From Haplodiscus bocki (taxonomy: Eukaryota): DNA of 64,000 bases. The stretch's first letter is position 1, and each line of letters starts with the position of its first letter. The stretch spans positions 39,866,001-39,930,000 of the forward strand of contig OZ296656.1 in assembly GCA_965655095.1 (NCBI GenBank), written 5' to 3'. Shown one piece after another: positions 1 through 64,000 of this stretch. Made by a program: the position numbers and the translations under genes. A model generated the notes under the pieces. It saw nothing but the letters and a program-made list of their open reading frames with translations. It did no database searches and was not told the DNA's origin.

Positions 1-3000
1 ATGGAGCCCATAGAAATCTTCCCAGCAAAAAAGCGCATGGAGAAAGCCCGGAAAAAATTGCACTAAAAAATATTCGGCGACAGAGGGCACTGAAAACGAC
101 CCTCTGAACAATTATTGGAAACCGGCCATGCGAAAGAGTGCACAAGAGATGCCCCTGCGAAAAACCCACGGGAAAATCCCTGCAGAGGAGAGTGCGGAAG
201 AAGCTTCCTGAAAGCGGTCGTGAAAAAAACCCCTGCAAAAAAGCGCGCTGCAGAAACTTCTGCGAAAGAGCGTGCCGAAAAAGCCACTGCGAAGAAGCGC
301 ACAGGAAAAGCTCCTGGGTATGAGCCGATCGATATCTCCACTGCGAAAGAGTGCCAGGGAAAATAGCCCCACGAAAGATAGCACGGTAAAAGCTGCGCGA
401 AAAGGTCCACGGGAAAAGCACATACCAAAAAGAGCACGAAAAAAGACCCTACCAAACAGTGCAGGTAAAAAGTTCCTGCAAAGAATTGCACAGACGAAAC
501 CCTTGCGAAAGAGCGCACAAAAAAAGCCCCCCGCAAATGCTCCCATTGAAGTCTTTCCTGCAAAAAATTGCACGGAGAAAGACCCGGAAAAAATTGAACC
601 AAAAATCCACCCCGCAGAGAGAACACTGTAAACGACCTCGCGAAAGAGTCCATGGAAACCGTCCATGCGGAAGTTTGCGCGGAAGGTGCACCGGGGAATA
701 ACCCATGGGGAAAGCCCTGCAAAGGAGCGTGCCGAAAAAGCTTTGCGAAAGAAGGCGCGGAGAAGAGGCCTTGCACAAAAGCGCAAGGCAAAAACGCCTG
801 CGATAAGGCGCCAGCAAAATTGATCTGCCGGAAAGCTCACGGAGGAAAGCACTGAATAACACGCACGAAGAAGCTCCTGGGAAAGAGGGCACGCAAAAAA
901 CCACTCCAAAGATGCGCACGGATAAAGCTACGGAGGATGAGCCCATGGATACCTCCGTTGCGAAAGAAAGCCCGGGGAAAAAGCCCCCGCAAAAAACCCC
1001 TTGTAGGTTGTTCATGCGAAAATTTTCACGGAAGCTTGCAAAGGAGGTATCCCTTGGGAAAAAGCCCAAGGGAAAAATCGTGCTAAAGATCGCACACAGA
1101 ATGGTTCTGCGGAAAAGTGCGCGGGAGCAACCCTAAAAAAACACACTGAAAAAACCATTGCAAAAGAGCGCACGGAAATGTGCCCTGCAAAGAAACGCAC
1201 GCAAAAAGTTCAGGGGGATGAGCCCATGGATATCTCCGCTGCGAAAGACTGCACGGTAAAACACGCCCCAAGAAGAGCAGAAAAAAGTCCCCCCCCCCGC
1301 AAAAAAAACCCACGGTAAAACGACTTACGAAAAAGTGCACGAAAAAAACCCTTACAAAATACAGCAGATAAAATGTTCCTCCGAAAGAGCGCAGGAAAAA
1401 AAACCCTTGCAAAAAAGTCTCGGAAAAAACTCAGCGATAAAGCGCACGGAAAGAGGCACTGCTAAATAGCGTTCGGAAATAGCCCCAACGAAGGAGCTTA
1501 TGGATATCTGCCTTGCAGAAAAGTGCAGGATAAAAGCTCCACATGAGAGAGTGTAAAAAGACCCTACCAAACAGTGCAAGTAAAAAAATCCTGCATAGAA
1601 TTGCACAGACAAATCCCTTGCGAAAGAGCGCACAAAAAAAGCCCCCCGCAAATGCTCCCATTGAAGTCTCCCCTGCAAATAATTGCACGGAGAAAGACCT
1701 GGAAAAAATTGAACCAAAAATCCACCCCCCAGAGAGAACACTGTAAACGACCTCGCGAAAGAGTCCATGGAAACCGTCCATGCGGAAGTTTGCACGGAAG
1801 ATGCACCGGGGAATAACCCATGGGGAATGCCCTGCAAAAGAGCGTGCCGAAAAAGCTTTGCGAAAGAAGGCGCGGAAAAGAGGCCCTGCACAAAAGCGCA
1901 AGGCAAAAACGCCTGCGATAGGGCGCCAGCAATATTGATCTGCCGGAAAACGCACGGAGGAAAGCACTAAGTAAAACGCACGAGGAAGCTACTGGGAAAG
2001 AGGGCACGCAAAAAACCACTCCAAAGAAGCGCACGGAAAAAGCTACTGAGGATGAGCCCATGGATACCTCCGTCGCGAAAGAAAGCCCGGGGAAACAGCC
2101 TCGCAAGAGATAACACGGAAAAAGCCCCCGCAAAAGAACCCTTGTAAGTTGTCCATGCGAAACAGTTCACGGAAGGTATCCCCAAGAAAGAGTCCATGGT
2201 AAACGCACTGCGAAAATACGTACCAAACAAGCCCCAGCAAAAGAACCCAGGGAAGTCTCATGCAAAAATATGCACGGAGGAGGCCCCGGAAAAAATGCAC
2301 CAAAAAGTTACCCTCCGGAGAGTGCACTGAAAACGATCCCGCAAAAAATTCGATTGAAACCGTCAATGCGAAAGATTGCAAAGGAGGTATCCCTTGGGAA
2401 AAAGCCCAAGGGAAAAATCGTGCTAAAGATCGCACACAGAATGGTTCTGCGGAAAAGTGCACGGGAGCAACCCTAAAAAAACACACTGAAAAAACCATTG
2501 CAAAAGAGCGCACGGAAATGTGCCCTGCAAAGAAACGCACGCAAAAAGTTCAGGGGGATGAGCCCATGGATATCTCCGCTGCGAAAGACTGCACGGTAAA
2601 ACACGCCCCAAGAAGAGCAGAAAAAAGTCCCCCCCCCCCCGCAAAAAAAACCCACGGTAAAACGACTTACGAAAAAGTGCACGAAAAAAACCCTTACAAA
2701 ATACAGCAGATAAAATGTTCCTCCGAAAGAGCGCAGGAAAAAAAACCCTTGCAAAAAAGTCTCGGAAAAAACTCAGCGATAAAGCGCACGGAAAGAGGCA
2801 CTGCTAATTTTTGTTCACAAATAGCCCCCACGAAGGAGCTTATGGATATCTCCATTGCAGAAAAGTGCAGGATAAAAGCTCCACATGAGAGAGTGTACCG
2901 AAAAAGCCCCCGCGATGTAGCCCATAGAAATCTTCCCAGCAAAAAAGCGCACGGAGAAAGCCCGGAAAATATTGCACTAAAAAATATTCGGCGACAGAGG

Positions 3001-4380
3001 GCACTGAAAACGACCCTCCGAACAATTATTGGAAACCGTCCATGCAAAAGAGAGCACAAGAGATGCCCCTGCGAAAAACCCACGGGAAAATCCCTGCAGA
3101 GGAGAGTGCGGAAGAAGCTTTCTGAAAACGGTCGTGAAAAAAACCCCTGCAAAAAAGCGCGCTGCAAAAACTTCTGCGAAAGAGCGTGCCGAAAAAGCCA
3201 CTGCGAAGAAGCGCACAGGAAAAGCTGCTGGGTATGAGCCGATCGATATCTCCACTGCGAAAGAGTGCCAGGGAAAATAGCCCCACGAAAGATAGCACGG
3301 TAAAAGCTGCGCGAAAAGGTCCACGGGAAAAGCACATACCAAAAAGAGCACGAAAAAAGACCCTACCAAACAGTGCAGGTAAAAAGTTCCTGCAAAGAAT
3401 TGCACAGACGAAACCCTTGCGAAAGAGCGCACAAAAAAACGCCCCCCGCAAATGCTCCCATTGAAGTCTTTCCTGCAAAAAATTGCACGGAGAAAGACCC
3501 GGAAAAAATTGAACTAAAAATCCACCCCCCAGAGAGAACACTGTAAACGACCTCGCGAAAGAGTCCATGGAAACCGTCCATGCGGAAGTTTGCGCGGAAG
3601 AAGCACCGGGGAATAACCCATGGGGAAAGCCCTGCAAAAGGGCGTGCCGAAAAAGCTTTGCGAAAGAAGGCGCGGAAAAAAGGCCTTGCACAAAAGCGCA
3701 AGGCAAAAACGCCTGCGATAAGGCGCCAGCAAAATTGATCTGCCGGAAAGCTCACGGAGGAAAGCACTGAATAACACGCACGAAGAAGCTCCTGGGAAAG
3801 ACGGCACGCAAAAAACCACTCCAAAGATGCGCACGGATAAAGCTACGGAGGATGAGCCCATGGATACCTCCGTTGCGAAAGAAAGCCCGGGGAAAAAGCC
3901 CCCGCAAAAAACCCCTTGTAGGTTGTTCATGCGAAAATTTTCACGGAAGCTTGCAAAGGAGGTATCCCTTGGGAAAAAGCCCAAGGGAAAAATCGTGCTA
4001 AAGATCGCACACAGAATGGTTCTGCGGAAAAGTGCACGGGAGCAACCCTAAAAAAACACACTGAAAAAACCATTGCAAAAGAGCGCACGGAAATGTGCCC
4101 TGCAAAGAAACGCACGCAAAAAGTTCAGGGGGATGAGCCCATGGATATCTCCGCTGCGAAAGACTGCACGGTAAAACACGCCCCAAGAAGAGCAGAAAAA
4201 AGTCCCCCCCCCCCGCAAAAAAAACCCACGGTAAAACGACTTACGAAAAAGTGCACGAAAAAAACCCTTACAAAATACAGCAGATAAAATGTTCCTCCGA
4301 AAGAGCGCAGGAAAAAAAACCCTTGCAAAAAAGTCTCGGAAAAAACTCAGCGATAAAGCGCACGGAAAGAGGCACTGCTA
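1..4380 (+). repeat. Direct repeat at ~2914-2915 bp offset (1-~1465 repeated at ~2915-4380)
   Basis: Matching ORFs at 115/3029, 652/3567, 912/3827 and 1012/3927. Both copies share private 26-bp and 199-bp deletions. Confidence 0.85.
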
Positions 4381-4806
4381 ATTTTTGTTCAGAAATAGAC
4401 CCCACGAAGGAGCTTATGGATATCTCCATTGCAGAAAAGTGCAGGATAAAAGCTCCACATGAGAGAGTGTACCGAAAAAGCCCCCGCGATGTAGCCCATA
4501 GAAATCTTCCCAGCAAAAAAGCGCACGGAGAAAGCCCGGAAAAAATTGCACTAAAAAATATTCGGCGACAGAGGGCACTGAAAACGACCCTCCGAACAAT
4601 TATTGGAAACCGTCCATGCAAAAGAGAGCACAAGAGATGCCCCTGCGAAAAACCCACGGGAAAATCCCTGCAGAGGAGAGTTTGGAAGAAGCTTTCTGGA
4701 AGCGGTCGTGAAAAAAACCCTGTAAAAAAGCGCGCTGCAAAAACTTCTGCGAAAGAGCGTGCCGAAAAAGCCACTGCGAAGAAGCGCACAGGAAAAGCTG
4801 CTGGGT

Positions 4807-7050
4807 ATGAGCCGATCGATATCTCCACTGCGAAAGAGTGCCAGGGAAAACAGCCCCACGAAAGAGAGCACGGTAAAAGCTGCGCGAAAAGTTCCACGGG
4901 AAAAGCACATACAAAAAAGAGCACGAAAAAAGACCTTACCAAACAGTGCAGGTAAAAAGTTCCGGCAGAGAATTGCACAGACGAAACCCTTGCGAAAGAG
5001 CGCACAAAAAAGCCCCCCCCCAAATGCTCCCATTGAAGTCTCCCCTGCAAAAAATTGCACGCAGAAAGACCCGGAATAATTGAACCAAAAATCCACCCCC
5101 CAGAGAGAACACTGTAAACGACCTCGCGAAAGAGTCCATGGAAACCGTCCATGCGGAAGTTTGCACGGAAGATGCACCAGGGAATAACCCATGGGGAAAG
5201 CCCTGCAAAAGAGCGTGCCGAAAAAGCTTTGCGAAAGAAGGCGCGGAAAAGAGGCCTTGCACAAAAGCGCAAGGCAAAAACGCCTGCGATAAGGCGCCAG
5301 CAAAATTGATCTGCCGGAAAGCGCACGGAATAAAGCACTAAGTAAAACGCACGAAGAAGCTCCTGGGAAAGAGGGCACGCAAAAAACCACTCCAAAGAAG
5401 CGCACGGAAAAAGCTACTGAGGATGAGCCCATGGATACCTCCGTCGCGAAAGAAAGCCCGGGGAAACAGCCTCGCAAGAGATAGCACGGAAAAAGCCCCC
5501 GCAAAAAACCCCTTGTAAGTTGTCCATGCGAAACAGTTCACGGAAGGTATCCCCAAGAAAGAGTCCATGGTAAACGCACTGCGAAAAAACTTACCAAACA
5601 AGCCCCAGCAAAAGAACCCAGGGAAGTCTCATGCAAAAATATGCACGGAGGAGGCCCCGGAAAAAATGCACCAAAATAATACCCTCCGGAGAGTGCACTG
5701 AAAAGGATCCCGCAAAAAATTCGATTGAAACCGTCAATGCGAAAGATTGCAAAGGAGGTACCCCTTGGGGAAAAGCCCAAGGGAATAATCGTGCTAAAGA
5801 GCGCACACAGAATGGTTCTGTGGAAAAGTGCACGGGAGCAACCCTAAAAAAACGCACTGAAAGAACCACTGCAAAAGAGCGCACGGAAATGTGCCCTGCA
5901 AAGAAACGCACGCAAAAGGTTCAAGGGGATGAGCCGATCGATATCTCCACTGCGAAAGAGTGCCAGGGAAAACAGCCCTACGAAAGAGAGCACGGTAAAA
6001 GCTGCGCGAAAAGGTCCACGGGAAAAGCACATACAAAAAAGAGCACGAAAAAAGACCTTACCAAACAGTGCAGGTAAAAAGTTCCGGCAGAGAATTGCAC
6101 AGACGAAACCCTTGCGAAAGAGCGCACAAAAAAGCCCCCCCCCAAATGCTCCCATTGAAGTCTCCCCTGCAAAAAATTGCACGCAGAAAGACCCGGAATA
6201 ATTGAACCAAAAATCCACCCCCCAGAGAGAACACTGTAAACGACCTCGCGAAAGAGTCCATGGAAACCGTCCATGCGGAAGTTTGCACGGAAGACGCACC
6301 AGGGAATAACCCATGGGGAAAGCCCTGCAAAAGAGCGTGCCGAAAAAGCTTTGCGAAAGAAGGCGCGGAAAAGAGGCCTTGCACAAAAGCGCAAGGCAAA
6401 AACGCCTGCGATAAGGCGCCAGCAAAATTGATCTGCCGGAAAGCGCACGGAATAAAGCACTAAGTAAAACGCACGAAGAAGCTCCTGGGAAAGAGGGCAC
6501 GCAAAAAACCACTCCAAAGAAGCGCACGGAAAAAGCTACTGAGGATGAGCCCATGGATACCTCCGTCGCGAAAGAAAGCCCGGGGAAACAGCCTCGCAAG
6601 AGATAGCACGGAAAAAGCCCCCGCAAAAAACCCCTTGTAAGTTGTCCATGCGAAACAGTTCACGGAAGGTATCCCCAAGAAAGAGTCCATGGTAAACGCA
6701 CTGCGAAAAAACTTACCAAACAAGCCCCAGCAAAAGAACCCAGGGAAGTCTCATGCAAAAATATGCACGGAGGAGGCCCCGGAAAAAATGCACCAAAATA
6801 ATACCCTCCGGAGAGTGCACTGAAAACGATGCCGCAAAAAATTCGATTGAAATCGTCAATGCGAAAGATTGTAAAGGAGGTACCCCTTGGGGAAAAGCCC
6901 AAGGGAATAATCGTGCTAAAGAGCGCACACAGAATGGTTCTGTGGAAAAGTGCACGGGAGCAACCCTAAAAAAACGCACTGAAAGAACCACTGCAAAAGA
7001 GCGCACGGAAATGTGCCCTGCAAAGAAACGCACGCAAAAGGTTCAAGGGG
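4807..7050 (+). repeat. Tandem duplication, 2 x 1122 bp
   Basis: ATGAGCC at 4807, 5929 and 7051. Near-identical ORFs at 4936/6058, 5138/6260, 5338/6460 and 5631/6753. Confidence 0.92.
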
Positions 7051-7329
7051 ATGAGCCCATGGATATCTCCGCTGCAAAAGACTGCACGGTAAAACACGCC
7101 CCAAGAAGAGCAGAAAAAAATCCCCCCGCAAAAAAAACCCACGGTAAAACCACTTGCGAAAATGTGCACGAAAAAAAACCCCTACGAATGACAGCAGATA
7201 AAATGTTCCTGCGAAAGAGCGCAGGAAAAAAAGCCCCCACAAACAACCCCTTGTAAGTTGTCCATGCGAAACTGTTCACGGAAGATATCCCCAAGGAAGA
7301 GCCCATGTTAAACGCACTGCGAAAAAACG

Positions 7330-10300
7330 TACCAAACAAGCCCCAGCGAAAGAGCCCAGGGAAGTCTCATGCAAAAATATGCACGGAGGAGGCCCCGGGA
7401 AAAATGCGCCAATAAGTTACCCTCCGGATAGTGCACTGAAAACGATCCTGCGAAAAATTCAATTGAAACCGTCCATGCGAAAGATTGCAAAGGAGGTACC
7501 CCTTGGGAAAAAGCGCAAGGGAAAAATCGTGCTAAAGGGCGCACACAGAATGGTTCTGTGGAAAACTGCACGGGAGCAACCCTAAAAAATGCACTGAAAA
7601 AACCACTGCCAAAGAGCGCACGGAAATGTGCCCTGCAAACAAAAGCACGCAAAAAGTTCAAGGAATGAGCCCACGGATATCTCCGCTGCGAAAAACTGCA
7701 CGGTAAAACACACCCCAGGAAGAGCAGAAAAAAATCTCCCCGCAAAAGAACCCACGGTAAAACCACTTGCGAAAAAGTGCACGAAAAAAAACCCCTACGA
7801 AAGACAGCAGATAAAATGTTCCTGCGAAAGAGCGCAGGAAAAAAAACCCTCGCAAAAAAGTCTGGGAAATAACTCAGCAAAAAAGCGCACGGAAAGAGGC
7901 ACTGCTAAATAGCGTTCGGAAATAGCCCCAACGAAGGAGCTTATGGATATCTGCCTTGCAGAAAAGTGCAGGATAAAAGCTCCACATGAGAGAGTGTAAA
8001 AAGACCCTACCAAACAGTGCAAGTAAAAAAATCCTGCATAGAATTGCACAGACGAATCCCTTGCGAAAGAGCGCACAAAAAAAGCCCCCCGCAAATGCTC
8101 CCATTGAAGTCTCCCCTGCAAACAATTGCACGGAGAAAGACCCGGAAAAAATTGAACCAAAAATCCACCCCCCAGAGAGAACACTGTAAACGACCTCGCG
8201 AAAGAGTCCATGGAAACCGTCCATGCGGAAGTTTGCACGGAAGATGCACCGGGGAATAACCCATGGGGAAAGCCCTGCAAAAGAGCGTGCCGAAAAAGCT
8301 TTGCGAAAGAAGGCGCGGAAAAGAGGCCCTGCACAAAAGCGCAAGGCAAAAACGCCTGCGAAAGGGCGCCAGCAATATTGATCTGCCGGAAAACGCACGG
8401 AGGAAAGCACTAAGTAAAACGCACGAGGAAGCTACTGGGAAAGAGGGCACGCAAAAAACCACTCCAAAGAAGCGCACGGAAAAAGCTACTGAGGATGAGC
8501 CCATGGATACCTCCGTCGCGAAAGAAAGCCCGGGGAAACAGCCTCGCAAGAGATAGCACGGAAAAAGCCCCCGCAAAAGAACCCTTGTAAGTTGTCCATG
8601 CGAAACAGTTCACGGAAGGTATCCCCAAGAAAGAGTCCATGGTAAACGCACTGCGAAAAAACGTACCAAACAAGCCCCAGCAAAAGAACCTAGGGAAGTC
8701 TCATGCAAAAATATGCACGGAGGAGGCCCCGGAAAAAATGCACCAAAAAGTTACCCTCCGGAGAGTGCACTGAAAACGATCCCGCAAAAAATTCGATTGA
8801 AACCGTCCATGCGAAAGATTGCAAAGGAGGTACCCCTTGGGAAAAAGCGCAAGGGAAAAATCGTGCTAAAGGGCGCACACAGAATGGTTCTGTGGAAAAC
8901 TGCACGGGAGCAACCCTAAAAAAATGCACTGAAAAAACCACTGCCAAAGAGGGCACGGAAATGTGCCCTGCAAACAAAAGCACGCAAAAAGTTCAACGAT
9001 TGAGCCCACGGATATCTCCGCTGCGAAAAACTGCACGGTAAAAAACACCCCAGGAAGAGCAGAAAAAAATCTCCCCGCAAAAGAACCCACGGTAAAACCA
9101 CTTGCGAAAAAGTGCACGAAAAAAAACCCCTACGAAAGAGAGCAGATGAAATGATCCTGCGAAAGAGCGCAGGAAAAAAAACCCTTGCAAAAAAGTCTGT
9201 GAAATAACTCAGCAATAAAGCGCACGGAAAGAGGCACTGCTAAATAGCGTTCGGAAATAGCCCCAACGAAGGAGCTTATGGATATCTGCCTTGCAGAAAA
9301 GTGCAGGATAAAAGCTCCACATGAGAGAGTGTAAAAAGACCCTACCAAACAGTGCAAGTAAAAAAATCCTGCATAGAATTGCACAGACGAATCCCTTGCG
9401 AAAGAGCGCACAAAAAAAGCCCCCCGCAAATGCTCCCATTGAAGTCTCCCCTGCAAACAATTGCACGGAGAAAGACCCGGAAAAAATTGAACCAAAAATC
9501 CACCCCCCAGAGAGAACACTGTAAACGACCTCGCGAAAGAGTCCATGGAAACCGTCCATGCGGAAGTTTGCACGGAAGATGCACCGGGGAATAACCCATG
9601 GGGAAAGCCCTGCAAAAGAGCGTGCCGAAAAAGCTTTGCGAAAGAAGGCGCGGAAAAGAGGCCCTGCACAAAAGCGCAAGGCAAAAACGCCTGCGAAAGG
9701 GCGCCAGCAATATTGATCTGCCGGAAAACGCACGGAGGAAAGCACTAAGTAAAACGCACGAGGAAGCTACTGGGAAAGAGGGCACGCAAAAAACCACTCC
9801 AAAGAAGCGCACGGAAAAAGCTACTGAGGATGAGCCCATGGATACCTCCGTCGCGAAAGAAAGCCCGGGGAAACAGCCTCGCAAGAGATAGCACGGAAAA
9901 AGCCCCCGCAAAAGAACCCTTGTAAGTTGTCCATGCGAAACAGTTCACGGAAGGTATCCCCAAGAAAGAGTCCATGGTAAACGCACTGCGAAAAAACGTA
10001 CCAAACAAGCCCCAGCAAAAGAACCTAGGGAAGTCTCATGCAAAAATATGCACGGAGGAGGCCCCGGAAAAAATGCACCAAAAAGTTACCCTCCGGAGAG
10101 TGCACTGAAAACGATCCCGCAAAAAATTCGATTGAAACCGTCCATGCGAAAGATTGCAAAGGAGGTACCCCTTGGGAAAAAGCGCAAGGGAAAAATCGTG
10201 CTAAAGGGCGCACACAGAATGGTTCTGTGGAAAACTGCACGGGAGCAACCCTAAAAAAATGCACTGAAAAAACCACTGCCAAAGAGGGCACGGAAATGTG

Positions 10301-51145: not shown

Positions 51146-54100
51146 TCACGGAAAATGTCCCTGCGAAGAATCGCACAACTTAGTGCCCCGCGGTTCAACC
51201 CATGGGAACATCCGCTGCCAAGGAGTGTGCGAAAGGACAAAACTGCAAAAAACAGCACGGAAAAAGCCCCTACGGAAAAGAGCACGAAAAAAGGCCCCCA
51301 CAGAAAAACCCTTGGAAGTCGTCCATACGAAACAGTTCACGGTAGATGTCACCAAGAAAGGTCCCACGGGAATTTCCCTGCAAAAAAGTGCACAGAAGAA
51401 GCCACTGCGAAAAAAAGGCACGGAACCAGCCCCGCGAAAAAGTGCTCGCAAATAGCCACTATAAAGAATCGCTACGGAAAAGTCCTGGCAAAAAAACCCA
51501 TGGAAGATGTCCATGCGAAAGAGTTCACGTAAGATATCCCCGAGAGAGAGCCCACTTGAAATCCCTGCGAAAGTGCATGCAGAAGAAGCTCTGCGAAATA
51601 GTTCACAGAATTTGTCTCCAGGAAAGAACCCATTGTAAAAACCCTGCCAAAGACCATGCAGACGAAGCCCTGCGCAAGATGTTACGCAAAATGCCTCTGC
51701 AAAAAACACCAAGGATAAAACCCCTGCGGGAGAGCTCAGGGAAGTCTTTGCTACAAAAGAGTGCAAAATAAAAAGCTCCAGGACAGAGCGTACCAAAAGC
51801 CCCAACGAAAGTGCCCAAGGAAATCTCCCTCGCGGAAAATTCCACGGAGAAGGCCCCGGAAGAAAAGTGCACAAAAAACTCTGCGACAAAGCAAACTGAA
51901 AACCGCCATGCGAAAGAGTCCATGGTAACCGTCCATGCGAAAGTGTTCACGGAAGATATCCCCGAGAGAGAGGCCACTTAAAATTACTTCGAAAGTGCAT
52001 GCAGAAGAAACCCTGCGAAAGAGGGCATGAAAATTGACCACGCAAAGGATTGCACGGAAGATGTCCCTTGGAATGAAACCACAGGAAAAGCCGCGGAAAA
52101 AATTTTGCGAAAAAGGCCAAGCAAAAACAACCCCGCAAAAGCGCTCACGGAAACAGCCACTGCAGAAAAAGCGCCGCGAAAGAGTCCATGGAAATCGTCC
52201 ATAAGGAGGAGTTCACGGAAACAGTCTCCAAGAAAGAGCCCGTGGTAAAAGCCATGCCAAAGCCCATGCAGAGAAAACCCTGCGAAAGATGTAACGCAAA
52301 AAAATCTCTGCAGAAAAAGAGCAAAGGAAAAACCCCTGCGAAAGAGCTCATGGAATTCTCTGCTGCAAAAGAGTGCAAGATAAAAGGGTCCCACGAAAGA
52401 GCGTACCAAAAAAACCCCAGCGAAGGAGCCCATAAAAATCGTCCATGCAAAAAGATGCACGCAGGAGGAACCAGAAAAAAATGCGCTAAAAAATTTCCCG
52501 CGCGCACAGAAAACTACCCTGCGAAAAAACCATGGAAACCATCTGTTCGAAAGTTTGCACGGAGGTTGCACCCGGGAAAAAACCCTTTGAAAAAGCCCTG
52601 TGAAAGAGCGTGCTGAAAAACTTTTGGGATTTTGTGATATAGGGCGCGGGAAAAAAGGCCTTGCTCAAAAGCGCACCTCAAAAACCCCTGCGGTAGGGCA
52701 GCCGCAAAATGGTTCTGCGAAGAAGCGTACGGAGAACAACTCTAAAGAACACGCATGGAAAAAACCCCGCCGAAAGAGCGCACGCAAAAAGTCAATGCAA
52801 AGAATCGCAAGGAAAAAGCTCCTGAGGAAGAGCCCATGGATGCCTCCGTTGCGAAAGAGTGACCGGGGAAACAGTCTGCCGAGAGATAGCACGGAAAAAA
52901 CTCCCGCAAAATAACCTTTGGAATCGTCCATGCGAAACAGTTCTCAGAAGATGTCCCCAAGGAGGAACCCATGGTAAATGCACTGCCAAAGGCCATGCAG
53001 ACGATGCCCTGCAAAAGATTTACGCAAAAAACCAACTTCAAAAAACAACCAAGATAAAACACCTGCGGGATATCTCATGGAAATCTCCGCTACAAAAGGG
53101 TGCAAAATAAAATGGCTCCAGGACAAAGCGTACCAAAAAAGCCCCAGCGAAAATGCCGAAGGAAGTCCCCCTCGCAAAAAAGTCAACGGAGAAGGCCCCG
53201 ATAAAAGTGCACCGAAAAATCTTCCTCGAGAGAACGCACTAAAAACGACCCTGCGAAAAAGTCCATGGAAACCGTCCATGCAACAGAATGCACGGGAGAA
53301 GCCCCCGGAAAAAGGCTCAAGGGAAAATCTCTGTGAAAGAGCCTGCCGAAAAAGATTCCTGGAACAGGGCTTGGAAATAGACCCCTATGCAAAAACGCAC
53401 GGTAAGAATCCCTGCGAAAGAGAGCACGGAAAAAAGTTCTGCACAAAAGTGCACGAAAAATTTTTTGCAAGAAACCACTAGAGGAAAATCTCTGCGAAAA
53501 ATTGCACGCAAAAAGACATTGCAAGGAAGCGAACCGAAGACGCTCCTGGGATTAGCTCATGGACATCTCCGCTGCGAATAAGTGCCCGAGAAAACAGCCC
53601 CGCGAAAGAGAGCACGCAAAAAGCCCCGCGAAAGAGAGCACGCAAAAAGCCCCGCGAAAGTGTCCTTGGAAATCGTCGATTCAAGAGAGTGCACGGAAAA
53701 TGTCCCTGCGAAGAATCGCACAACTTAGTGCCCCGCGGTTCAACCCATGGGAACATCCGCTGCCAAGGAGTGTGCGAAAGGACAAAACTGCAAAAAACAG
53801 CACGGAAAAAGCCCCTACGGAAAAGAGCACGAAAAAAGGCCCCCACAGAAAAACACTTGGAAGTCGTCCATGCGAAACAGTTCACGGTAGATGTCACAAA
53901 GAAAGGTCCCACGGGAATTTCCCTGCAAAAAAGTGCACAGAAGAAGCCACTGCGAAAAAAAGGCACGGAACCAGCCCGCGAAAAAGCGCTCGCAAATAGC
54001 CACTATAAAGAATCGCTACGGAAAAGTCCTGGCAAAAAAACCCATGGAAAATGTCCATGCGAAAGAGTTCACGTAAGATATCCCCGAGAGAGAGCCCACT

Positions 54101-57100
54101 TGAAATCCCTGCGAAAGTGCATGCAGAAGAAGCTCTGCGAAATAGTTCACAGAATTTGTCTCCAGGAAAGAACCCATTGTAAAAACCCTGCCAAAGACCA
54201 TGCAGACGAAGCCCTGCGCAAGATGTTACGCAAAATGCCTCTGCAAAAAACACCAAGGATAAAACCCCTGCGGGAGAGCTCATGGAAGTCTTTGCTACAA
54301 AAGAGTGCAAATTAAAAGAGCTCCAGGACAGAGCGTACCAAAAAAGCCCCAACGAAAGTTCCCAAGGAAGTCTCCCTCGCGGAAAATTCCACGGAGAAGG
54401 CCCCGGGAGAGAAGTGCACAAAAGAAACTGCGACAAAGCAAACTGAAAACCACCATGCGATAGAGTCCATGGTAACCGTCCATGCGAAAGAGTTCACGGA
54501 AGATATCCCCGAGAGAGAGGCCACTTAAAATTACTTCGAAAGTGCATGCAGAAGAAACCCTGCGAAAGAGGGCATGAAAATTGACCACGCAAAGGATTGC
54601 ACGGAAGATGTCCCTTGGAATGAAACCACAGGAAAAGCCGCGGAAAAAACTTTGCGAAAAAGGCCAAGCAAAAACAACCCCGCAAAAGCGCTCACGGAAA
54701 CAGCCACTGCAGAAAAAGCGCCGCGAAAGAGTCCATGGAAATCGTCCATAAGGAGGAGTTCACTGAAACAGTCTCCAAGAAAGAGCCCGTGGTAAAAGCC
54801 ATGCCAAAGACCATGCATAGGAAACCCTGCGAAAAATGTAACGCAAAAAACCTCTGCAAAAAAGAGCAAGGGAAAAATCCCTGCGAAAGAGCTCATGGAA
54901 CTCTCCGCTGCAAAAGAGTGCAAGATAAAAGGGTCCCACGAAAGAGCGTGCCGAAAAACTTTTGGGATATAGGGCGTGGGAAAAAAGGCCTTGCTCAAAA
55001 GCGCACCTCAAAAACCCCTGCGGTAGGGCAGCCGCAAAATGGTTCTGCGAAGAAGCGCACGGGGAACAGCCCTAATAAATGCGAACGGAATAAACCACGC
55101 CAAAAGAGCGAACGCAAGAAGCCACTGCAAAGAATCGCAAGGAAAAAGCTCCTGAGGATGAGCCCATGGATGCCTCCGTTGCGAAAGAGTGACCGGGGAA
55201 ACAGTCTGCCGAGAGATAGCACGGAAAAAACTCCCGCAAAATAACCTTTGGAATCGTCCATGCGAAACAGTTCTCGAAAGATGTCCCCAAGGAGGAGCCC
55301 ATGGTAAAGCACTGTTAAAGACCATGCAGACGATGCCCTGCAAAAGATTTACGCAAAAAACCAACTTCAAAAAACAACCAAGATAAAACACCTGCGGGAT
55401 ATCTCATGGAAATCTCCGCTACAAAAGGGTGCAAAATAAAATGGCTCCAGGACAAAGCGTACCAAAAAAGCCCCAGCGAAAATGCCGAAGGAAGTCCCCC
55501 TCGCAAAAAAGTCAACGGAGAAGGCCCCGATAAAAGTGCACCGAAAAATCTTCCTCGAGAGAACGCACTAAAAACGACCCTGCGAAAAAGTCCATGGAAA
55601 CCGTCCATGCAACAGAATGCACGGGAGAAGCCCCCGGAAAAAGGCTCAAGGGAAAATCTCTGTGAAAGAGCCTGCCGAAAAAGATTCCTGGAACAGGGCT
55701 TGGAAATAGACCCCTATGCAAAAACGCACGGTAAGAATCCCTGCGAAAGAGAGCACGGAAAAAAGTTCTGCACAAAATTGCACGAAAAAAAGCTTTGCAA
55801 AAAAGTGCTAGGAGAAATTCTCTGCGAAAAATTGCACGCAAAAAGACATTGCAAGGAAGCGAACCGAAGACGCTCCTGGGATTAGCTCATGGACATCTCC
55901 GCTGCGAATAAGTGCCCGAGAAAACAGCCCCGCGAAAGAGAGCACGCAAAAAGCCCCGCGAAAGAGAGCACGCAAAAAGCCCCGCGAAAGTGTCCTTGGA
56001 AATCGTCGATTCAAGAGAGTGCACGGAAAATGTCCCTGCGAAGAATCGCACAACTTAGTGCCCCGCGGTTCAACCCATGGGAACATCCGCTGCCAAGGAG
56101 TGTGCGAAAGGACAAAACTGCAAAAAACAGCACGGAAAAAGCCCCTACGGAAAAGAGCACGAAAAAAGGCCCCCACAGAAAAACACTTGGAAGTCGTCCA
56201 TGCGAAACAGTTCACGGTAGATGTCACAAAGAAAGGTCCCACGGGAATTTCCCTGCAAAAAAGTGCACAGAAGAAGCCACTGCGAAAAAAAGGCACGGAA
56301 CCAGCCCGCGAAAAAGCGCTCGCAAATAGCCACTATAAAGAATCGCTACGGAAAAGTCCTGGCAAAAAAACCCATGGAAAATGTCCATGCGAAAGAGTTC
56401 ACGTAAGATATCCCCGAGAGAGAGCCCACTTGAAATCCCTGCGAAAGTGCATGCAGAAGAAGCTCTGCGAAATAGTTCACAGAATTTGTCTCCAGGAAAG
56501 AACCCATTGTAAAAACCCTGCCAAAGACCATGCAGACGAAGCCCTGCGCAAGATGTTACGCAAAATGCCTCTGCAAAAAACACCAAGGATAAAACCCCTG
56601 CGGGAGAGCTCAGGGAAGTCTTTGCTACAAAAGAGTGCAAAATAAAAAGCTCCAGGACAGAGCGTACCAAAAGCCCCAACGAAAGTGCCCAAGGAAATCT
56701 CCCTCGCGGAAAATTCCACGGAGAAGGCCCCGGAAGAAAAGTGCACAAAAAACTCTGCGACAAAGCAAACTGAAAACCGCCATGCGAAAGAGTCCATGGT
56801 AACCGTCCATGCGAAAGTGTTCACGGAAGATATCCCCGAGAGAGAGGCCACTTAAAATTACTTCGAAAGTGCATGCAGAAGAAACCCTGCGAAAGAGGGC
56901 ATGAAAATTGACCACGCAAAGGATTGCACGGAAGATGTCCCTTGGAATGAAACCACAGGAAAAGCCGCGGAAAAAATTTTGCGAAAAAGGCCAAGCAAAA
57001 ACAACCCCGCAAAAGCGCTCACGGAAACAGCCACTGCAGAAAAAGCGCCGCGAAAGAGTCCATGGAAATCGTCCATAAGGAGGAGTTCACGGAAACAGTC

Positions 57101-60100
57101 TCCAAGAAAGAGCCCGTGGTAAAAGCCATGCCAAAGCCCATGCAGAGAAAACCCTGCGAAAGATGTAACGCAAAAAAATCTCTGCAGAAAAAGAGCAAAG
57201 GAAAAACCCCTGCGAAAGAGCTCATGGAATTCTCTGCTGCAAAAGAGTGCAAGATAAAAGGGTCCCACGAAAGAGCGTACCAAAAAAACCCCAGCGAAGG
57301 AGCCCATAAAAATCGTCCATGCAAAAAGATGCACGCAGGAGGAACCAGAAAAAAATGCGCTAAAAAATTTCCCGCGCGCACAGAAAACTACCCTGCGAAA
57401 AAACCATGGAAACCATCTGTTCGAAAGTTTGCACGGAGGTTGCACCCGGGAAAAAACCCTTTGAAAAAGCCCTGTGAAAGAGCGTGCTGAAAAACTTTTG
57501 GGATTTTGTGATATAGGGCGCGGGAAAAAAGGCCTTGCTCAAAAGCGCACCTCAAAAACCCCTGCGGTAGGGCAGCCGCAAAATGGTTCTGCGAAGAAGC
57601 GTACGGAGAACAACTCTAAAGAACACGCATGGAAAAAACCCCGCCGAAAGAGCGCACGCAAAAAGTCAATGCAAAGAATCGCAAGGAAAAAGCTCCTGAG
57701 GAAGAGCCCATGGATGCCTCCGTTGCGAAAGAGTGACCGGGGAAACAGTCTGCCGAGAGATAGCACGGAAAAAACTCCCGCAAAATAACCTTTGGAATCG
57801 TCCATGCGAAACAGTTCTCAGAAGATGTCCCCAAGGAGGAACCCATGGTAAATGCACTGCCAAAGGCCATGCAGACGATGCCCTGCAAAAGATTTACGCA
57901 AAAAACCAACTTCAAAAAACAACCAAGATAAAACACCTGCGGGATATCTCATGGAAATCTCCGCTACAAAAGGGTGCAAAATAAAATGGCTCCAGGACAA
58001 AGCGTACCAAAAAAGCCCCAGCGAAAATGCCGAAGGAAGTCCCCCTCGCAAAAAAGTCAACGGAGAAGGCCCCGATAAAAGTGCACCGAAAAATCTTCCT
58101 CGAGAGAACGCACTAAAAACGACCCTGCGAAAAAGTCCATGGAAACCGTCCATGCAACAGAATGCACGGGAGAAGCCCCGGGAAAAAGGCTCAAGGGAAA
58201 ATCTCTGTGAAAGAGCCTGCCGAAAAAGATTCCTGGAACAGGGCTTGGAAATAGACCCCTATGCAAAAACGCACGGTAAGAATCCCTGCGAAAGAGAGCA
58301 CGGAAAAAAGTTCTGCACAAAAGTGCACGAAAAATTTTTTGCAAGAAACCACTAGAGGAAAATCTCTGCGAAAAATTGCACGCAAAAAGACATTGCAAGG
58401 AAGCGAACCGAAGACGCTCCTGGGATTAGCTCATGGACATCTCCGCTGCGAATAAGTGCCCGAGAAAACAGCCCCGCGAAAGAGAGCACGCAAAAAGCCC
58501 CGCGAAAGAGAGCACGCAAAAAGCCCCGCGAAAGTGTCCTTGGAAATCGTCGATTCAAGAGAGTGCACGGAAAATGTCCCTGCGAAGAATCGCACAACTT
58601 AGTGCCCCGCGGTTCAACCCATGGGAACATCCGCTGCCAAGGAGTGTGCGAAAGGACAAAACTGCAAAAAACAGCACGGAAAAAGCCCCTACGGAAAAGA
58701 GCACGAAAAAAGGCCCCCACAGAAAAACACTTGGAAGTCGTCCATGCGAAACAGTTCACGGTAGATGTCACAAAGAAAGGTCCCACGGGAATTTCCCTGC
58801 AAAAAAGTGCACAGAAGAAGCCACTGCGAAAAAAAGGCACGGAACCAGCCCGCGAAAAAGCGCTCGCAAATAGCCACTATAAAGAATCGCTACGGAAAAG
58901 TCCTGGCAAAAAAACCCATGGAAAATGTCCATGCGAAAGAGTTCACGTAAGATATCCCCGAGAGAGAGCCCACTTGAAATCCCTGCGAAAGTGCATGCAG
59001 AAGAAGCTCTGCGAAATAGTTCACAGAATTTGTCTCCAGGAAAGAACCCATTGTAAAAACCCTGCCAAAGACCATGCAGACGAAGCCCTGCGCAAGATGT
59101 TACGCAAAATGCCTCTGCAAAAAACACCAAGGATAAAACCCCTGCGGGAGAGCTCATGGAAGTCTTTGCTACAAAAGAGTGCAAATTAAAAGAGCTCCAG
59201 GACAGAGCGTACCAAAAAAGCCCCAACGAAAGTTCCCAAGGAAGTCTCCCTCGCGGAAAATTCCACGGAGAAGGCCCCGGGAGAGAAGTGCACAAAAGAA
59301 ACTGCGACAAAGCAAACTGAAAACCACCATGCGATAGAGTCCATGGTAACCGTCCATGCGAAAGAGTTCACGGAAGATATCCCCGAGAGAGAGGCCACTT
59401 AAAATTACTTCGAAAGTGCATGCAGAAGAAACCCTGCGAAAGAGGGCATGAAAATTGACCACGCAAAGGATTGCACGGAAGATGTCCCTTGGAATGAAAC
59501 CACAGGAAAAGCCGCGGAAAAAACTTTGCGAAAAAGGCCAAGCAAAAACAACCCCGCAAAAGCGCTCACGGAAACAGCCACTGCAGAAAAAGCGCCGCGA
59601 AAGAGTCCATGGAAATCGTCCATAAGGAGGAGTTCACTGAAACAGTCTCCAAGAAAGAGCCCGTGGTAAAAGCCATGCCAAAGACCATGCATAGGAAACC
59701 CTGCGAAAAATGTAACGCAAAAAACCTCTGCAAAAAAGAGCAAGGGAAAAATCCCTGCGAAAGAGCTCATGGAACTCTCCGCTGCAAAAGAGTGCAAGAT
59801 AAAAGGGTCCCACGAAAGAGCGTGCCGAAAAACTTTTGGGATATAGGGCGTGGGAAAAAAGGCCTTGCTCAAAAGCGCACCTCAAAAACCCCTGCGGTAG
59901 GGCAGCCGCAAAATGGTTCTGCGAAGAAGCGCACGGGGAACAGCCCTAATAAATGCGAACGGAATAAACCACGCCAAAAGAGCGAACGCAAGAAGCCACT
60001 GCAAAGAATCGCAAGGAAAAAGCTCCTGAGGATGAGCCCATGGATGCCTCCGTTGCGAAAGAGTGACCGGGGAAACAGTCTGCCGAGAGATAGCACGGAA

Positions 60101-63100
60101 AAAACTCCCGCAAAATAACCTTTGGAATCGTCCATGCGAAACAGTTCTCGAAAGATGTCCCCAAGGAGGAGCCCATGGTAAAGCACTGTTAAAGACCATG
60201 CAGACGATGCCCTGCAAAAGATTTACGCAAAAAACCAACTTCAAAAAACAACCAAGATAAAACACCTGCGGGATATCTCATGGAAATCTCCGCTACAAAA
60301 GGGTGCAAAATAAAATGGCTCCAGGACAAAGCGTACCAAAAAAGCCCCAGCGAAAATGCCGAAGGAAGTCCCCCTCGCAAAAAAGTCAACGGAGAAGGCC
60401 CCGATAAAAGTGCACCGAAAAATCTTCCTCGAGAGAACGCACTAAAAACGACCCTGCGAAAAAGTCCATGGAAACCGTCCATGCAACAGAATGCACGGGA
60501 GAAGCCCCCGGAAAAAGGCTCAAGGGAAAATCTCTGTGAAAGAGCCTGCCGAAAAAGATTCCTGGAACAGGGCTTGGAAATAGACCCCTATGCAAAAACG
60601 CACGGTAAGAATCCCTGCGAAAGAGAGCACGGAAAAAAGTTCTGCACAAAATTGCACGAAAAAAAGCTTTGCAAAAAAGTGCTAGGAGAAATTCTCTGCG
60701 AAAAATTGCACGCAAAAAGACATTGCAAGGAAGCGAACCGAAGACGCTCCTGGGATTAGCTCATGGACATCTCCGCTGCGAATAAGTGCCCGAGAAAACA
60801 GCCCCGCGAAAGAGAGCACGCAAAAAGCCCCGCGAAAGAGAGCACGCAAAAAGCCCCGCGAAAGTGTCCTTGGAAATCGTCGATTCAAGAGAGTGCACGG
60901 AAAATGTCCCTGCGAAGAATCGCACAACTTAGTGCCCCGCGGTTCAACCCATGGGAACATCCGCTGCCAAGGAGTGTGCGAAAGGACAAAACTGCAAAAA
61001 ACAGCACGGAAAAAGCCCCTACGGAAAAGAGCACGAAAAAAGGCCCCCACAGAAAAACCCTTGGAAGTCGTCCATACGAAACAGTTCACGGTAGATGTCA
61101 CCAAGAAAGGTCCCACGGGAATTTCCCTGCAAAAAAGTGCACAGAAGAAGCCACTGCGAAAAAAAGGCACGGAACCAGCCCCGCGAAAAAGTGCTCGCAA
61201 ATAGCCACTATAAAGAATCGCTACGGAAAAGTCCTGGCAAAAAAACCCATGGAAAATGTCCATGCGAAAGAGTTCACGTAAGATATCCCCGAGAGAGAGC
61301 CCACTTGAAATCCCTGCGAAAGTGCATGCAGAAGAAGCCCTGCGAAATAGTTCACGGAATTTGTCTCCAGGAAAGAGCCCATTGTAAAAACCCTGCCAAA
61401 GACCATGCAGACGAAGCCCTGCGCAAGATGTTACGCAAAATGCCTCTGCAAAAAACACTAAGGATAAAACCCCTGCGGGAGAGCTCAGGGAAGTCTTTGC
61501 TACAAAAGAGTGCAAATTAAAAAAGCTCCAGGACAGAGCGTACCAAAAAGCCCCAACGAAAGTTCCCAAGGAAGTCTCCCTCGCGGAAAATTCCACGGAG
61601 AAGGCCCCGGGAGAGAAGTGCACAAAAAAAACTGCGACAAAGCAAACTGAAAACCACCATGCGATAAAGGCCATGGTAACCGTCCATGCGAAAGAGTTCA
61701 CGGAAGATATCCCCGAGAGAGAGGCCACTTAAAATTACTTCGAAAGTGCATGCAGAAGAAACCCTGCGAAAGAGGGCATGAAAATTGACCACGCAAAGGA
61801 TTGCACGGAAGATGTCCCTTGGAATGAAACCACAGGAACAGCCGCGGAAAAAACTTTGCGAAAAAGGCCAAGCAAAAACAACCCCGCAAAAGCGCTCACG
61901 GAAACAGCCACTGCAGAAAAAGCGCCGCGAAAGAGTCCATGGAAATCGTCCATAAGGAGGAGTTCACTGAAACAGTCTCCAAGAAAGAGCCCGTGGTAAA
62001 AGCCATGCCAAAGACCATGCATAGGAAACCCTGCGAAAAATGTAACGCAAAAAACCTCTGCAAAAAAGAGCAAGGGAAAAATCCCTGCGAAAGAGCTCAT
62101 GGAACTCTCTGCTGAAAAAGAGTGCAGGATAAAAGGGTCCCACGAAAGAGCGTGCCGAAAAACTTTTGGGATATAGGGCGTGGGAAAAAAGGCCTTGCTC
62201 AAAAGCGCACCTCAAAAACCCCTGCGGTAGGGCAGCCGCAAAATGGTTCTGCGAAGAAGCGCACGGGGAACAGCCCTAATAAATGCGAACGGAATAAACC
62301 ACGCCAAAAGAGCGAACGCAAGAAGCCACTGCAAAGAATCGCAAGGAAAAAGTTCCTGAGGAAGAGCCCATGGATGCCTCCGTTGCGAAAGAGTGACCGG
62401 GGAAACAGTCTGCCGAGAGATAGCACGGAAAAAACTCCCGCAAAATAACCTTTGGAATCGTCCATGCGAAACAGTTCTCAGAAGATGTCCCCAAGGAGGA
62501 ACCCATGGTAAATGCACTGCCAAAGGCCATGCAGACGATGCCCTGCAAAAGATGTTACGCAAAAAATCAACTTCAAAAAACAACCAGGATAAAACACCTG
62601 CGGGATAGGTCATCGAAATCTCCGCTACAAAAGAGTGCAAAATAAAAGGGCTCCAGGACAGAGCGTACCAAAAAAACCCCAGCGAAAGTGCCCAAGGAAG
62701 TCTCCCTCGCGAAAAAGTCCACGGAGAAGGCCCCGAAAAAAATGCACCGAAAAATTTTCCGCGAGAGACCGCACTAAAAACGACCCTGCGAAATTGTCCA
62801 TGGAAACCGTCCATGCAAAAGAATGCACGGGAAAAGCCCCCGGGAAAAGGCTCAAGGGAAAATCTCTGTGAAAGAGCGTGCCGAAAAAGATTCCTGAAAC
62901 AGGGCTCGGAAAAGGACCCCCGTACAAAAACGCACGGTAAGAATCCCTGCGAAAGAGAGCACGGAAAATAGTTCTGCACAAAAAAGCATGAAAAGGAATT
63001 TGCAAAGTAGCGCTAGAAGAAAATCTCTGCGAAAAAGCGCACGCAAAAAGACATTGCAAGGAAGCGAACCGAAAACGCTCCTGGGATTAGCTCATGGACA

Positions 63101-64000
63101 TCTCCGCTGCGAATAAGTGCGCGGAGAAACAGCCCCGCGAAAGAGAGCACGAAAAAAGCCCCCACAGAAAAACCAATGGATATCGTTCATGCGAAAGGGT
63201 TCACGGAATTTGTCTCCAGGAAAGAGCCCATTGTAAAAACCCTGCCAAAGACCACGCAGTCGAAGCCCTGCAAAAGATGTTACGCAAAATGCCTCTGCAG
63301 AAAACACCCAGGAAAAAACCCCTGCGGGAGAGCTCATGGACGTCTTTGCTACAAAAGAGTGCAAAATAAAAAGCTCCAGGACAGAGCGTACCAAAAGCCC
63401 CAACGAAAGTGCCCAAGGAAATCTCCCTCGCGGAAAATTCCACGGAGAAGGCCCCGGAAGAAAAGTGCACAAAAAACTCTGCGACAAAGCAAACTGAAAA
63501 CCGCCATGCGAAAGAGTCCATGGTAACCGTCCATGCGAAAGTGTTCACGGAAGATATCCCCGAGAAAGAGGCTACTTAAAATCCCTTCGAAAGTGAATGC
63601 AGAAGAAACCCTGCGAAAGAAGGCATGAAAATTGACTACGCAAAGGAGTGCACGGAAGATGTCCCTTGGAAAGAAACCACAGGAACAGCCGCGGAAAAAG
63701 CATTGCGAAAAAGGCCAAGCAAAACAACCCCGCAAAAGCGCTCGCAGAAACAACCACTGCGAAAAAAGCGCCGCGAAACAATCCATGGAAATCGTCCATA
63801 AGGAGGAGTTCACGGAAACAGTCTCCAAGAAAGAGCCCGTGGTAAAAGCCATGCCAAAGACCATGCATAGGAAACCCTGCGAAAAATGTAACGCAAAAAA
63901 CCTCTGCAAAAAAGAGCAAGGGAAAAACCCCTGCGAAAGAGCTCATGGAACTCTCTGCTGAAAAAGAGTGCAAGATAAAAGGGTCCCACGAAAGAGCGTA
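51146..64000 (+). repeat. Right HOR domain: alternating 2544- and 2330-bp units giving a 4874-bp super-repeat (2 copies), then a further short unit and a diverged partial unit
   Basis: MVFGRVFT ORFs at 51472, 54016, 56346, 58890 and 61221 (offsets 2544, 2330, 2544, 2331). Offset 4874 at 52600/57474, 53478/58352, 54735/59609 and 55808/60682. Confidence 0.93.
53597..53660 (+). repeat. Exact tandem duplication of one 26-bp monomer (GCCCCGCGAAAGAGAGCACGCAAAAA)
   Basis: Copies start at 53597 and 53623, with a partial third at 53649. Also present near 55927, 58471 and 60801; single-copy in the relative at ~50279. Confidence 0.9.

What the first reader, a model, noticed from the sequence alone, without database searches (positions are those of the whole stretch)
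1..64000. Multi-level satellite: ~13.5 bp > ~27 bp > ~0.6-0.75 kb > 1.1-2.5 kb > 2.6-4.9 kb, with at least eight HOR periods in 64 kb
Seen: a short, strongly diverged monomer is organised into near-identical kb-scale HORs whose period changes every 3-13 kb (1791, 1335, 1122, 1963, 1417, 1291/2583, 1271, 4874). Established: diverged monomers inside homogenised HORs is the architecture of primate alpha-satellite and other centromeric arrays. Inference: HORs of roughly 40-180 monomers built on a 27-bp unit, turning over this quickly, are unusual. I do not recognise the family, so it may be an undescribed (peri)centromeric or subtelomeric satellite.
Basis: partly seen in the sequence, partly recalled or inferred. 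Interest (0 to 1): 0.7.

Follow-up and report, generated by a model that had tools for sequence, protein, structure and literature searches.

The report
27-bp satellite array with kilobase repeats
The window is a real, non-coding stretch of one 248-kb tandem array whose very old 27-base units have been re-copied in blocks of 1.1 to 4.9 kb; this layered build is long known from other animals, and nothing here shows that it acts as a centromere.

Summary
All 64 kb align to one cyclic 27-bp consensus (a 13+14 bp dimer) at 72-74% identity, against 59.5% for a shuffle. There are 2,394 monomers that are only about 60% alike.

The window is the middle of a 247.5-kb array in one orientation at C9:39,755,101-40,002,620 of a 92.8-Mb contig. 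218 kb of it has no interruption. Window 1-19 kb is the right end of a ~95-kb core with about 60 copies of one unit in length variants (1.11, 1.34, 1.55, 1.79, 2.41 kb). So 1791, 1335 and 1122 are one family. The other periods have only 2-8 copies each.

The 27-bp family is not specific to this locus. Near-consensus arrays of 1-2 kb lie at many places on at least eight contigs, several per chromosome. This array's own diagnostic variant occurs only here.

It is not subtelomeric and not coding. No test of a centromeric role was possible. The architecture matches ruminant satellite I (31-bp subrepeat in 0.8-1 kb units). Earlier notes of this scan report many other layered satellites in this genome, on other DNA.

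Verdict: an ordinary higher-order satellite, a new member of a known kind.

The parts
1..64000 (+). Part of one uninterrupted head-to-tail array of diverged 27-bp monomers, with the A-rich strand on +. The whole array is C9:39,755,101-40,002,620, which is window -110,899 to +136,620.
   Evidence: A 38%, T 13%, autocorrelation peaks at 13/14 and 27; 2,394 monomers, 72-74% identity to the consensus, half exactly 27 bp long; no inverted matches; extent of the array and no interruption of 150 bp or more.
1..18990 (+). Right end of the ~95-kb core family. Copies of the 552-bp anchor block start at 440, 1555, 3354, 4927, 6049, 7998, 9333, 11125, 12917, 14249, 15585 and 16921, giving unit lengths of 1115, 1799, 1573, 1122, 1949, 1335, 1792, 1792, 1332, 1336 and 1336.
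   Evidence: 60 anchor copies at 92-100% from C9:39,789,400 to 39,882,921; each 1-kb block has about 50-60 copies at 90% or more. Window 1 to about 1,500 is the end of the third copy of a 4,699-bp unit that is 100% identical.
17638..21887 (+). Pair of units about 1.95 kb long (90.7% alike). This is the transition out of the core.
   Evidence: 17638-19924 against 19585-21887; lags 1961-1963.
21128..27316 (+). Local family of 1,417-bp units, about 4.4 copies at 91-98%.
26788..36627 (+). Local family of 1,291-bp units, about 7.6 copies. It was re-copied as 2,583-bp dimers that are up to 100% alike.
40552..43433 (+). 1,271-bp unit, 2.3 copies at 98.3% overall, with 1-kb blocks at 99.8-100%.
43434..51146 (+). 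Old zone with few copies. Most 1-kb blocks have no partner of 90% or more, yet monomer identity to the consensus is unchanged at about 71-72%.
51147..62162 (+). 4,874-bp unit, 2.3 copies at 99.2%. It is itself built from older sub-units of 2,330 and 2,544 bp that are 96-97% alike, so the duplication is nested.

Best explanation
The window is the middle of a 248-kb non-coding satellite array on a chromosome-scale contig of an animal genome. The mitochondrial tRNA content fits a bilaterian, and earlier scan notes call the animal an acoel.

Shown:
- The array descends from a tandem run of a 27-bp unit (consensus TGCGAAAGAGCGCACGGAAAAAGCCCC), which is itself a 13+14 bp dimer.
- Monomers are no longer homogenised against each other. 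All of them sit at about 72% identity to the consensus and about 60% to one another.
- Blocks of 40 to 180 monomers (1.1-4.9 kb) have been copied in tandem again and again, and in nested fashion.
- This left a ~95-kb core of about 60 units with length variants, plus many small, very young duplications (2-8 copies, up to 100% identical) scattered along the array.

Inferred:
- The copying mechanism is the standard one for satellites: out-of-register recombination, unequal sister-chromatid exchange or replication-based tandem duplication between monomers that lie in phase.
- Rapid turnover by this route would explain why 218 kb carry no transposon insertion in a genome rich in transposons.
- The array most likely has no sequence-specific function and is packaged as heterochromatin.

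The same 27-bp family also exists as many short, clean arrays elsewhere in the genome. How it spreads is unknown.
For: Periodicity and consensus.

Higher-order signature: monomers about 0.60 alike at every lag, long units 90-100% alike.

Extent and purity: one orientation, no inverted matches, 247.5 kb in all, 218.4 kb uninterrupted.

Non-coding: stop codons are equally frequent in all three frames of each strand. There is no Rfam match and no tRNA.

Nested duplications: 2330/2544 inside 4874 and 1291 inside 2583. At the left end, three macro-copies of a 3.4-kb transposon piece plus 10-13 kb of array.

Family spread: the 20-mer with up to 2 mismatches hits 4,914 times against 2 for the control. 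The 44-mer dimer with up to 3 mismatches hits 1,849 times against 0. Arrays of 1-2 kb are seen at seven loci. The C9 array holds only 297 and 0 of these hits.

Own variant: the diagnostic 20-mer occurs 93 times, all in this array and all forward.

Raw data: short unitigs from four runs of two samples hold the words at 99% or more.
Against: The mechanism is inferred from the pattern; no exchange event was observed.

The long-range order rests on one assembly. No read or contig that I could lay spans a unit junction, so the youngest 100%-identical copies could be miscounted.

No chromatin, RNA or cytological data exist, so 'no function' is a default and not a result.

How much of the family lies in other large diverged arrays is unknown. 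The spacing of hits at C2:16.36-16.44 Mb suggests at least one more.
Confidence: 0.8

Rival explanations
1. The array is the centromere, or the centromere core, of this chromosome.
For: It lies at 43% of the 92.8-Mb contig. It is larger than any other array named in the scan notes I read. It has a homogenised core with older flanks, and 218 kb are free of transposon insertions. Ty3/gypsy elements lie at its edge and in the left flank. Its closest described analogue, ruminant satellite I, is centromeric.
Against: There are no chromatin data. The 27-bp family sits at several loci per chromosome. Scan notes report many other layered satellites of unrelated families in this genome, none tied to a centromere. 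Young duplications are scattered along the array and not confined to one core. The strand folds only weakly better than shuffles (z -1.97).
Confidence: 0.1
2. The array is transposon-derived. It grew from the end of the dispersed repeat that abuts its left edge, or from a tandem region carried inside some other mobile element that also seeded the short arrays elsewhere.
For: The array starts within a few bases of the terminus of a dispersed repeat. That repeat has about 70%-identical copies on all large contigs, and these end at the same point. The family's many 1-2 kb arrays look like a dispersed, mobile source. Scan notes describe other satellites of this genome that grew from transposon ends or ride in Helitrons (not checked by me).
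Against: None of about 40 scored copies of that repeat continues into 27-bp repeats. None of seven short arrays has that repeat beside it.
Confidence: 0.12
3. The youngest levels (100%-identical copies of 1.3-4.9 kb) are assembly artefacts in a hard-to-assemble repeat.
For: No independent long record spans a junction. Only unitigs of 100-350 bp could be laid.
Against: The same periods occur at 90-98% identity with many private differences, which an assembler cannot invent. The diagnostic 20-mer occurs on no other contig, so no stray duplicate contig of this array is visible.
Confidence: 0.08
4. The array encodes a 9-residue repeat protein, since 27 bp equals 9 codons.
For: All frames of the consensus are open (my reading of the 27-mer). 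Open frames reach 344-392 codons.
Against: Stops are equally frequent in all three frames of each strand: 476-492 on +, 269-272 on -. Half of the monomers are not 27 bp long. In short arrays elsewhere the hit spacings of 55 and 80 bp break the frame.
Confidence: 0.01

Closest known systems
Ruminant (cervid and bovid) satellite I
   Same: A short initial unit of about 30 bp, now diverged, is organised into repeat units of kilobase scale whose length differs between lineages. PMC7288315 gives 0.8 kb and 1 kb for deer, citing Lee et al. 1997 and Plucienniczak et al. 1982. From my memory, the bovine 1.715 unit is about 1.4 kb.
   Different: There is no sequence relation. Here several unit lengths and several local families coexist within one array. 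The basic unit also persists as clean short arrays elsewhere in the genome. A centromeric location is shown for satellite I and is untested here.
Primate alpha-satellite higher-order repeats
   Same: Monomers are diverged, multi-monomer units are near-identical, and a homogenised core sits between older, more diverged flanks.
   Different: The monomer is 27 bp, not 171 bp, so it is unrelated to nucleosome length. Units hold 40-180 monomers, not 2-34 (that range is from my memory). Most units here have only 2-8 copies. No CENP-B-like box or centromeric-histone data exist.
Human satellites 2 and 3, and bovine 1.706 satellite (from my memory, not checked here)
   Same: Very short ancestral units (5 bp; 11+12=23 bp) have decayed and been re-amplified as units of kilobase scale. 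The 11+12 bp dimer parallels the 13+14 bp dimer here.
   Different: The sequences and taxa differ, and those are pericentromeric blocks of megabase size.
Dispersed minisatellite families
   Same: The unit falls in the 10-60 bp range. There is strong strand asymmetry (62.7% purine on +, my arithmetic from the base counts). Many loci of 1-2 kb lie on many chromosomes.
   Different: The locus studied is 248 kb long and has passed into a regime of long-unit amplification, which ordinary minisatellites do not show.

Membership tests
Higher-order-repeat (HOR) satellite DNA | Head-to-tail tandem monomers in one orientation | tested here: met
   Cyclic alignment covers 97-98% of bases. No inverted matches.
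Higher-order-repeat (HOR) satellite DNA | Monomers within a unit are much more diverged than equivalent monomers between units | tested here: met
   Monomer pairs are 0.60 alike, within the 1335 unit and at all lags. Units are 92-100% alike.
Higher-order-repeat (HOR) satellite DNA | The multi-monomer unit is itself repeated many times in tandem | tested here: inconclusive
   Met for the core: about 60 units, 12 of them in the window. The other periods have only 2-8 copies and are equally well described as local tandem duplications.
Centromeric satellite | Bound by centromeric histone (CENP-A/CENH3), or located at the primary constriction | not testable with these tools
   No ChIP, FISH or Hi-C data. 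No RNA or chromatin runs were listed.
Centromeric satellite | One principal array per chromosome | tested here: inconclusive
   The family has several loci per chromosome. The variant of this array is single-locus. The sizes of arrays on other chromosomes could not be read.
Subtelomeric satellite | Lies near a chromosome end | tested here: not met
   The array is at 39.76-40.00 Mb of a 92.8-Mb contig. This assumes the contig is chromosome-scale.
Transposon-derived satellite | The monomer or unit is homologous to part of a mobile element, or arrays sit inside copies of one | tested here: not met
   The dispersed repeat at the left edge ends where the array starts. Its other copies carry no array, and seven short arrays lack it. 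Other possible vectors were not tested.
Protein-coding tandem repeat | One reading frame kept open, with indels in multiples of three | tested here: not met
   Stops are equal in all frames. Monomer lengths of 24-30 bp are all common.

The most novel reading that the evidence does not exclude
This array is the functional centromere of one chromosome of a xenacoelomorph worm. It would be built from a 27-bp unit that the genome also keeps as many short 'seed' arrays, so centromere-type higher-order arrays here would arise from a dispersed minisatellite family. I know of no described centromere DNA for this group.
Probability: 0.1. Interest if true: 0.6.

Novelty: new member of a known kind. Interest (0 to 1): 0.3.

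Why it matters
The array gives a clean, fully resolved example of a satellite caught in two regimes within one genome. The same 27-bp unit exists as short arrays with near-consensus monomers, and as one 248-kb array where homogenisation at monomer level has stopped and only kilobase blocks are still copied. That is useful material for models of how higher-order periodicity arises, and for annotating repeats in a poorly studied animal group. It does not open a new kind of biology unless a centromeric role is shown.

Tried and rejected
- Coding repeat: rejected.
- Structured RNA or tRNA array: no Rfam or tRNA match.
- TRF at its default period limit reported only one 79-bp row, because the monomers are too diverged. 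I used autocorrelation and my own wrap-around alignment instead.
- A single universal ~1.3-kb unit for the whole window: rejected. Outside 1-19 kb the 1335 unit aligns at only 60-70%, which any shift in 27-bp register gives.
- CpG decay as a sign of methylation: CpG observed/expected is about 1 in both array and flanks, and C>T at CpG (0.22) is barely above non-CpG (0.16).
- Hairpin or dyad potential: weak (z -1.97). The bacterial promoter and terminator scan has no meaning here.
- Array inside an intron: no conserved exons were found in the flanks. Only Ty3/gypsy ORFs, one DnaJ-domain ORF and one ankyrin ORF 23 kb away turned up. The test is weak because short exons are missed.
I did not try to get the letters another way.
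- Reads: only short unitigs were available, so junctions are untested.
- Species name: not determined, because the organism is coded. Four mitochondrial tRNAs in 4.3 kb argue for a bilaterian and against a stony coral.
Full report
**What is in the window**

The + strand is 38% A and 13% T, with 49% G+C, evenly along all 64 kb. Self-identity peaks at lags 13/14 (0.39/0.38) and 27 (0.434), and then at every further multiple of about 13.5. Composition alone predicts 0.283, and the troughs fall to 0.19-0.22.

The most frequent words assemble into a 27-mer, TGCGAAAGAGCGCACGGAAAAAGCCCC. By my own reading of the consensus, its two halves share about 9 of 14 positions. Each half is a G+C-rich stretch of about 8 bases followed by an A run.

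A wrap-around alignment of the whole window to this cyclic consensus returns the same consensus after three rounds. Identity to the consensus is 72-74%, with 1.6-3% of bases unaligned. A shuffle gives 59.5%, far more gaps and a negative score.

The window holds 2,394 monomers, and half of them are exactly 27 bp long. Monomers are on average 60% alike, whether adjacent, at any lag, chosen at random or taken within one 1,335-bp unit. Homogenisation at the monomer level is therefore gone.

**The kilobase level**

- 1122, 1335/1336 and 1792
- about 1950-1963 (two copies, only 90.7%)
- 1417 (4.4 copies)
- 1291 (7.6 copies, re-copied as 2583-bp dimers up to 100% alike)
- 1271 (2.3 copies)
- 4874 (2.3 copies, 99.2%, built from older 2330/2544 sub-units at 96-97%)

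All matches are direct; there is not one inverted match.

The claimed 0.6-0.75 kb level is faint. An offset of 670 bp is the largest class among 70-80% matches, and one 616-bp offset reaches 92%. A diagnostic monomer recurs at 669-671 bp in some units. This agrees with the separate note on this window about a buried unit of about 668 bp.

**Not coding, not a known RNA**

Stop codons are equally frequent in all three frames of each strand. Monomer lengths of 24-30 bp are all common. There are no Rfam families and no tRNAs.

**The whole array**

The window is C9:39,866,001-39,930,000 of a 92.8-Mb contig in a 1.5-Gb assembly. I read 320 kb around it.

The array runs from 39,755,101 to 40,002,620, which is 247.5 kb in one orientation. 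From 39,784,072 to 40,002,465 (218.4 kb) no stretch of 150 bp or more departs from the 27-bp pattern. Identity to the consensus is a flat 0.70-0.73 throughout.

A 552-bp anchor block (window 7998-8549) has 60 copies at 92-100% between 39,789,400 and 39,882,921. Their spacings are about 1336 (about 22 times), 1792 (about 17), 1108-1122 (7), 2410 (4) and 1551-1573 (4). In this ~95-kb core each 1-kb block has 50-60 partners at 90% or more.

So window 1-19 kb is the right end of one large unit family.

To the right of the core lie small families with 2-8 copies, and zones with no partner at 90% or more. Duplications that are 99.8-100% identical occur at several separate places: 4699 bp in three copies just left of the window, then 2583, 1271 and 4874 bp inside it, and 3950 bp further right. 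Copying is therefore recent and scattered, not confined to one core.

**Edges**

The right edge:
- A Ty3/gypsy element has 171-bp LTRs that are 99% alike and a 5-bp target duplication (AAACC).
- It carries ORFs for gag-protease and for reverse transcriptase, RNase H and integrase.
- It sits about 90 bp before the true end of the array.

The left edge:
- The array begins within a few bases of the terminus of a dispersed repeat, whose copies (about 70% alike) lie on all large contigs and end at the same point.
- Those other copies do not continue into 27-bp repeats, and seven short arrays elsewhere lack that repeat beside them. It is therefore a neighbour and not the vector.
- The two 'interruptions' in the left 35 kb are local copies (89-95%) of that flank. 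The left end is three macro-copies of a 3.4-kb transposon piece plus 10-13 kb of array.

The flanks showed no conserved exons on both sides. This test is weak because short exons are missed.

**The family in the genome**

- A 20-mer of the consensus with up to 2 mismatches occurs 4,914 times, against 2 for the control.
- A 44-mer dimer with up to 3 mismatches occurs 1,849 times, against 0 for the control.
- Exact dimers lie at 16 or more loci on C1, C2, C4, C5, C6, C7, C9 (58.7 Mb) and C12, several per chromosome and on both strands.
- Seven of these loci are arrays of 0.9-2 kb with clean 27-bp spacing.
- The C9 array contributes only 297 of the 4,914 hits and none of the 1,849.
- A diagnostic 20-mer of this array occurs 93 times, all inside it and all forward.
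- Hits of one variant spaced 1.6-4 kb apart at C2:16.43-16.44 Mb, with a further hit at 16.36 Mb, suggest a second long-unit array.

**Independent data**

Four public runs from two samples of one study hold the sequence as unitigs of 100-350 bp at 99% identity or more. None spans a unit junction. The words are real, but the long-range copy numbers rest on the assembly alone. No RNA run is on record.

**Organism**

The name is coded. Earlier scan notes disagree: some say acoel, others coral. A 4.3-kb piece of the mitochondrial contig carries COX1 with TGA read as tryptophan. It also has four mitochondrial tRNAs: Val, Phe, Trp and Asp. From my own knowledge, this fits a bilaterian and not a stony coral, whose mitochondrial genome keeps only two tRNAs.

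**Explanation**

An old 27-bp tandem array lost homogenisation at the monomer level. It has since evolved by tandem duplication and deletion of multi-monomer blocks, most likely through unequal exchange between monomers in phase. This produced nested periodicities and length variants. The pattern is shown; the mechanism is inferred. The absence of transposon insertions over 218 kb fits fast turnover.

A centromeric role is possible, given the mid-contig position, the size and the layered build. But it is untested. This genome holds many other layered satellites of unrelated families according to earlier notes, and the 27-bp family is multi-locus. I put this reading at about 0.1.

**Comparison and novelty**

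Cervid and bovid centromeric satellite I arose from a 31-bp subrepeat organised in 0.8-1 kb units (PMC7288315). Higher-order units built on a monomer of about 30 bp are therefore not unusual.

No held paper contains a 14-mer of the consensus, and a search for papers on acoel satellites returned none that describes one. The one acoelomorph genome paper I opened showed nothing on them in the passages listed. Dfam, Repbase and nt were not available.

I class this as a new member of a known kind.

Noticed in passing
L035:2561-6836 (C9:40,002,561-40,006,836): A young Ty3/gypsy element of about 4.3 kb. It has 171-bp LTRs that are 99% alike, a 5-bp target duplication (AAACC) and open gag-protease and RT-RNaseH-integrase frames. 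It inserted about 90 bp before the right end of the array.
   Followed up: partly
L013:1802-5243 (C9:39,751,802-39,755,243); copies at C9:39,767,997-39,771,400 and 39,781,296-39,784,070: A non-coding dispersed repeat with over 1,000 first-look candidates and about 70%-identical copies on all large contigs. Its terminus abuts the first monomer of the array. This 3.4-kb piece plus 10-13 kb of array was duplicated locally into three macro-copies.
   Followed up: partly
C2:16,359,642-16,444,071 (coordinates only): Hits of one variant of the 27-bp dimer are spaced 1.6-4 kb apart (C2:16,426,563-16,444,071), with a further 20-mer hit at 16,359,642. This suggests a second large long-unit array of the same family on another chromosome.
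   Followed up: no
L012:1015-8586 (C9:39,731,015-39,738,586): A second Ty3/gypsy-type pol ORF (RNase H, integrase). It is followed by long ORFs with no family match and by a 339-residue ORF with a C-terminal DnaJ domain.
   Followed up: no
L036:5584-6036 (C9:40,025,584-40,026,036): An ankyrin-repeat ORF 23 kb right of the array. It is the only non-transposon protein domain seen in the right flank.
   Followed up: no
L009 (C6626:13,114-17,412): A piece of the mitochondrial contig with COX1 (6 TGA codons read as Trp) and four mitochondrial tRNAs (Val, Phe, Trp, Asp). This argues for a bilaterian and against the 'coral' label used in some earlier notes of this scan.
   Followed up: partly
window, each monomer (e.g. 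7206-7227, 14070-14091): Many monomers carry a short dyad: a stem CCTGCG / CGCAGG of 4-8 pairs around the loop AAAGAG. Folding of 300 nt is only weakly better than shuffles (z -1.97).
   Followed up: partly
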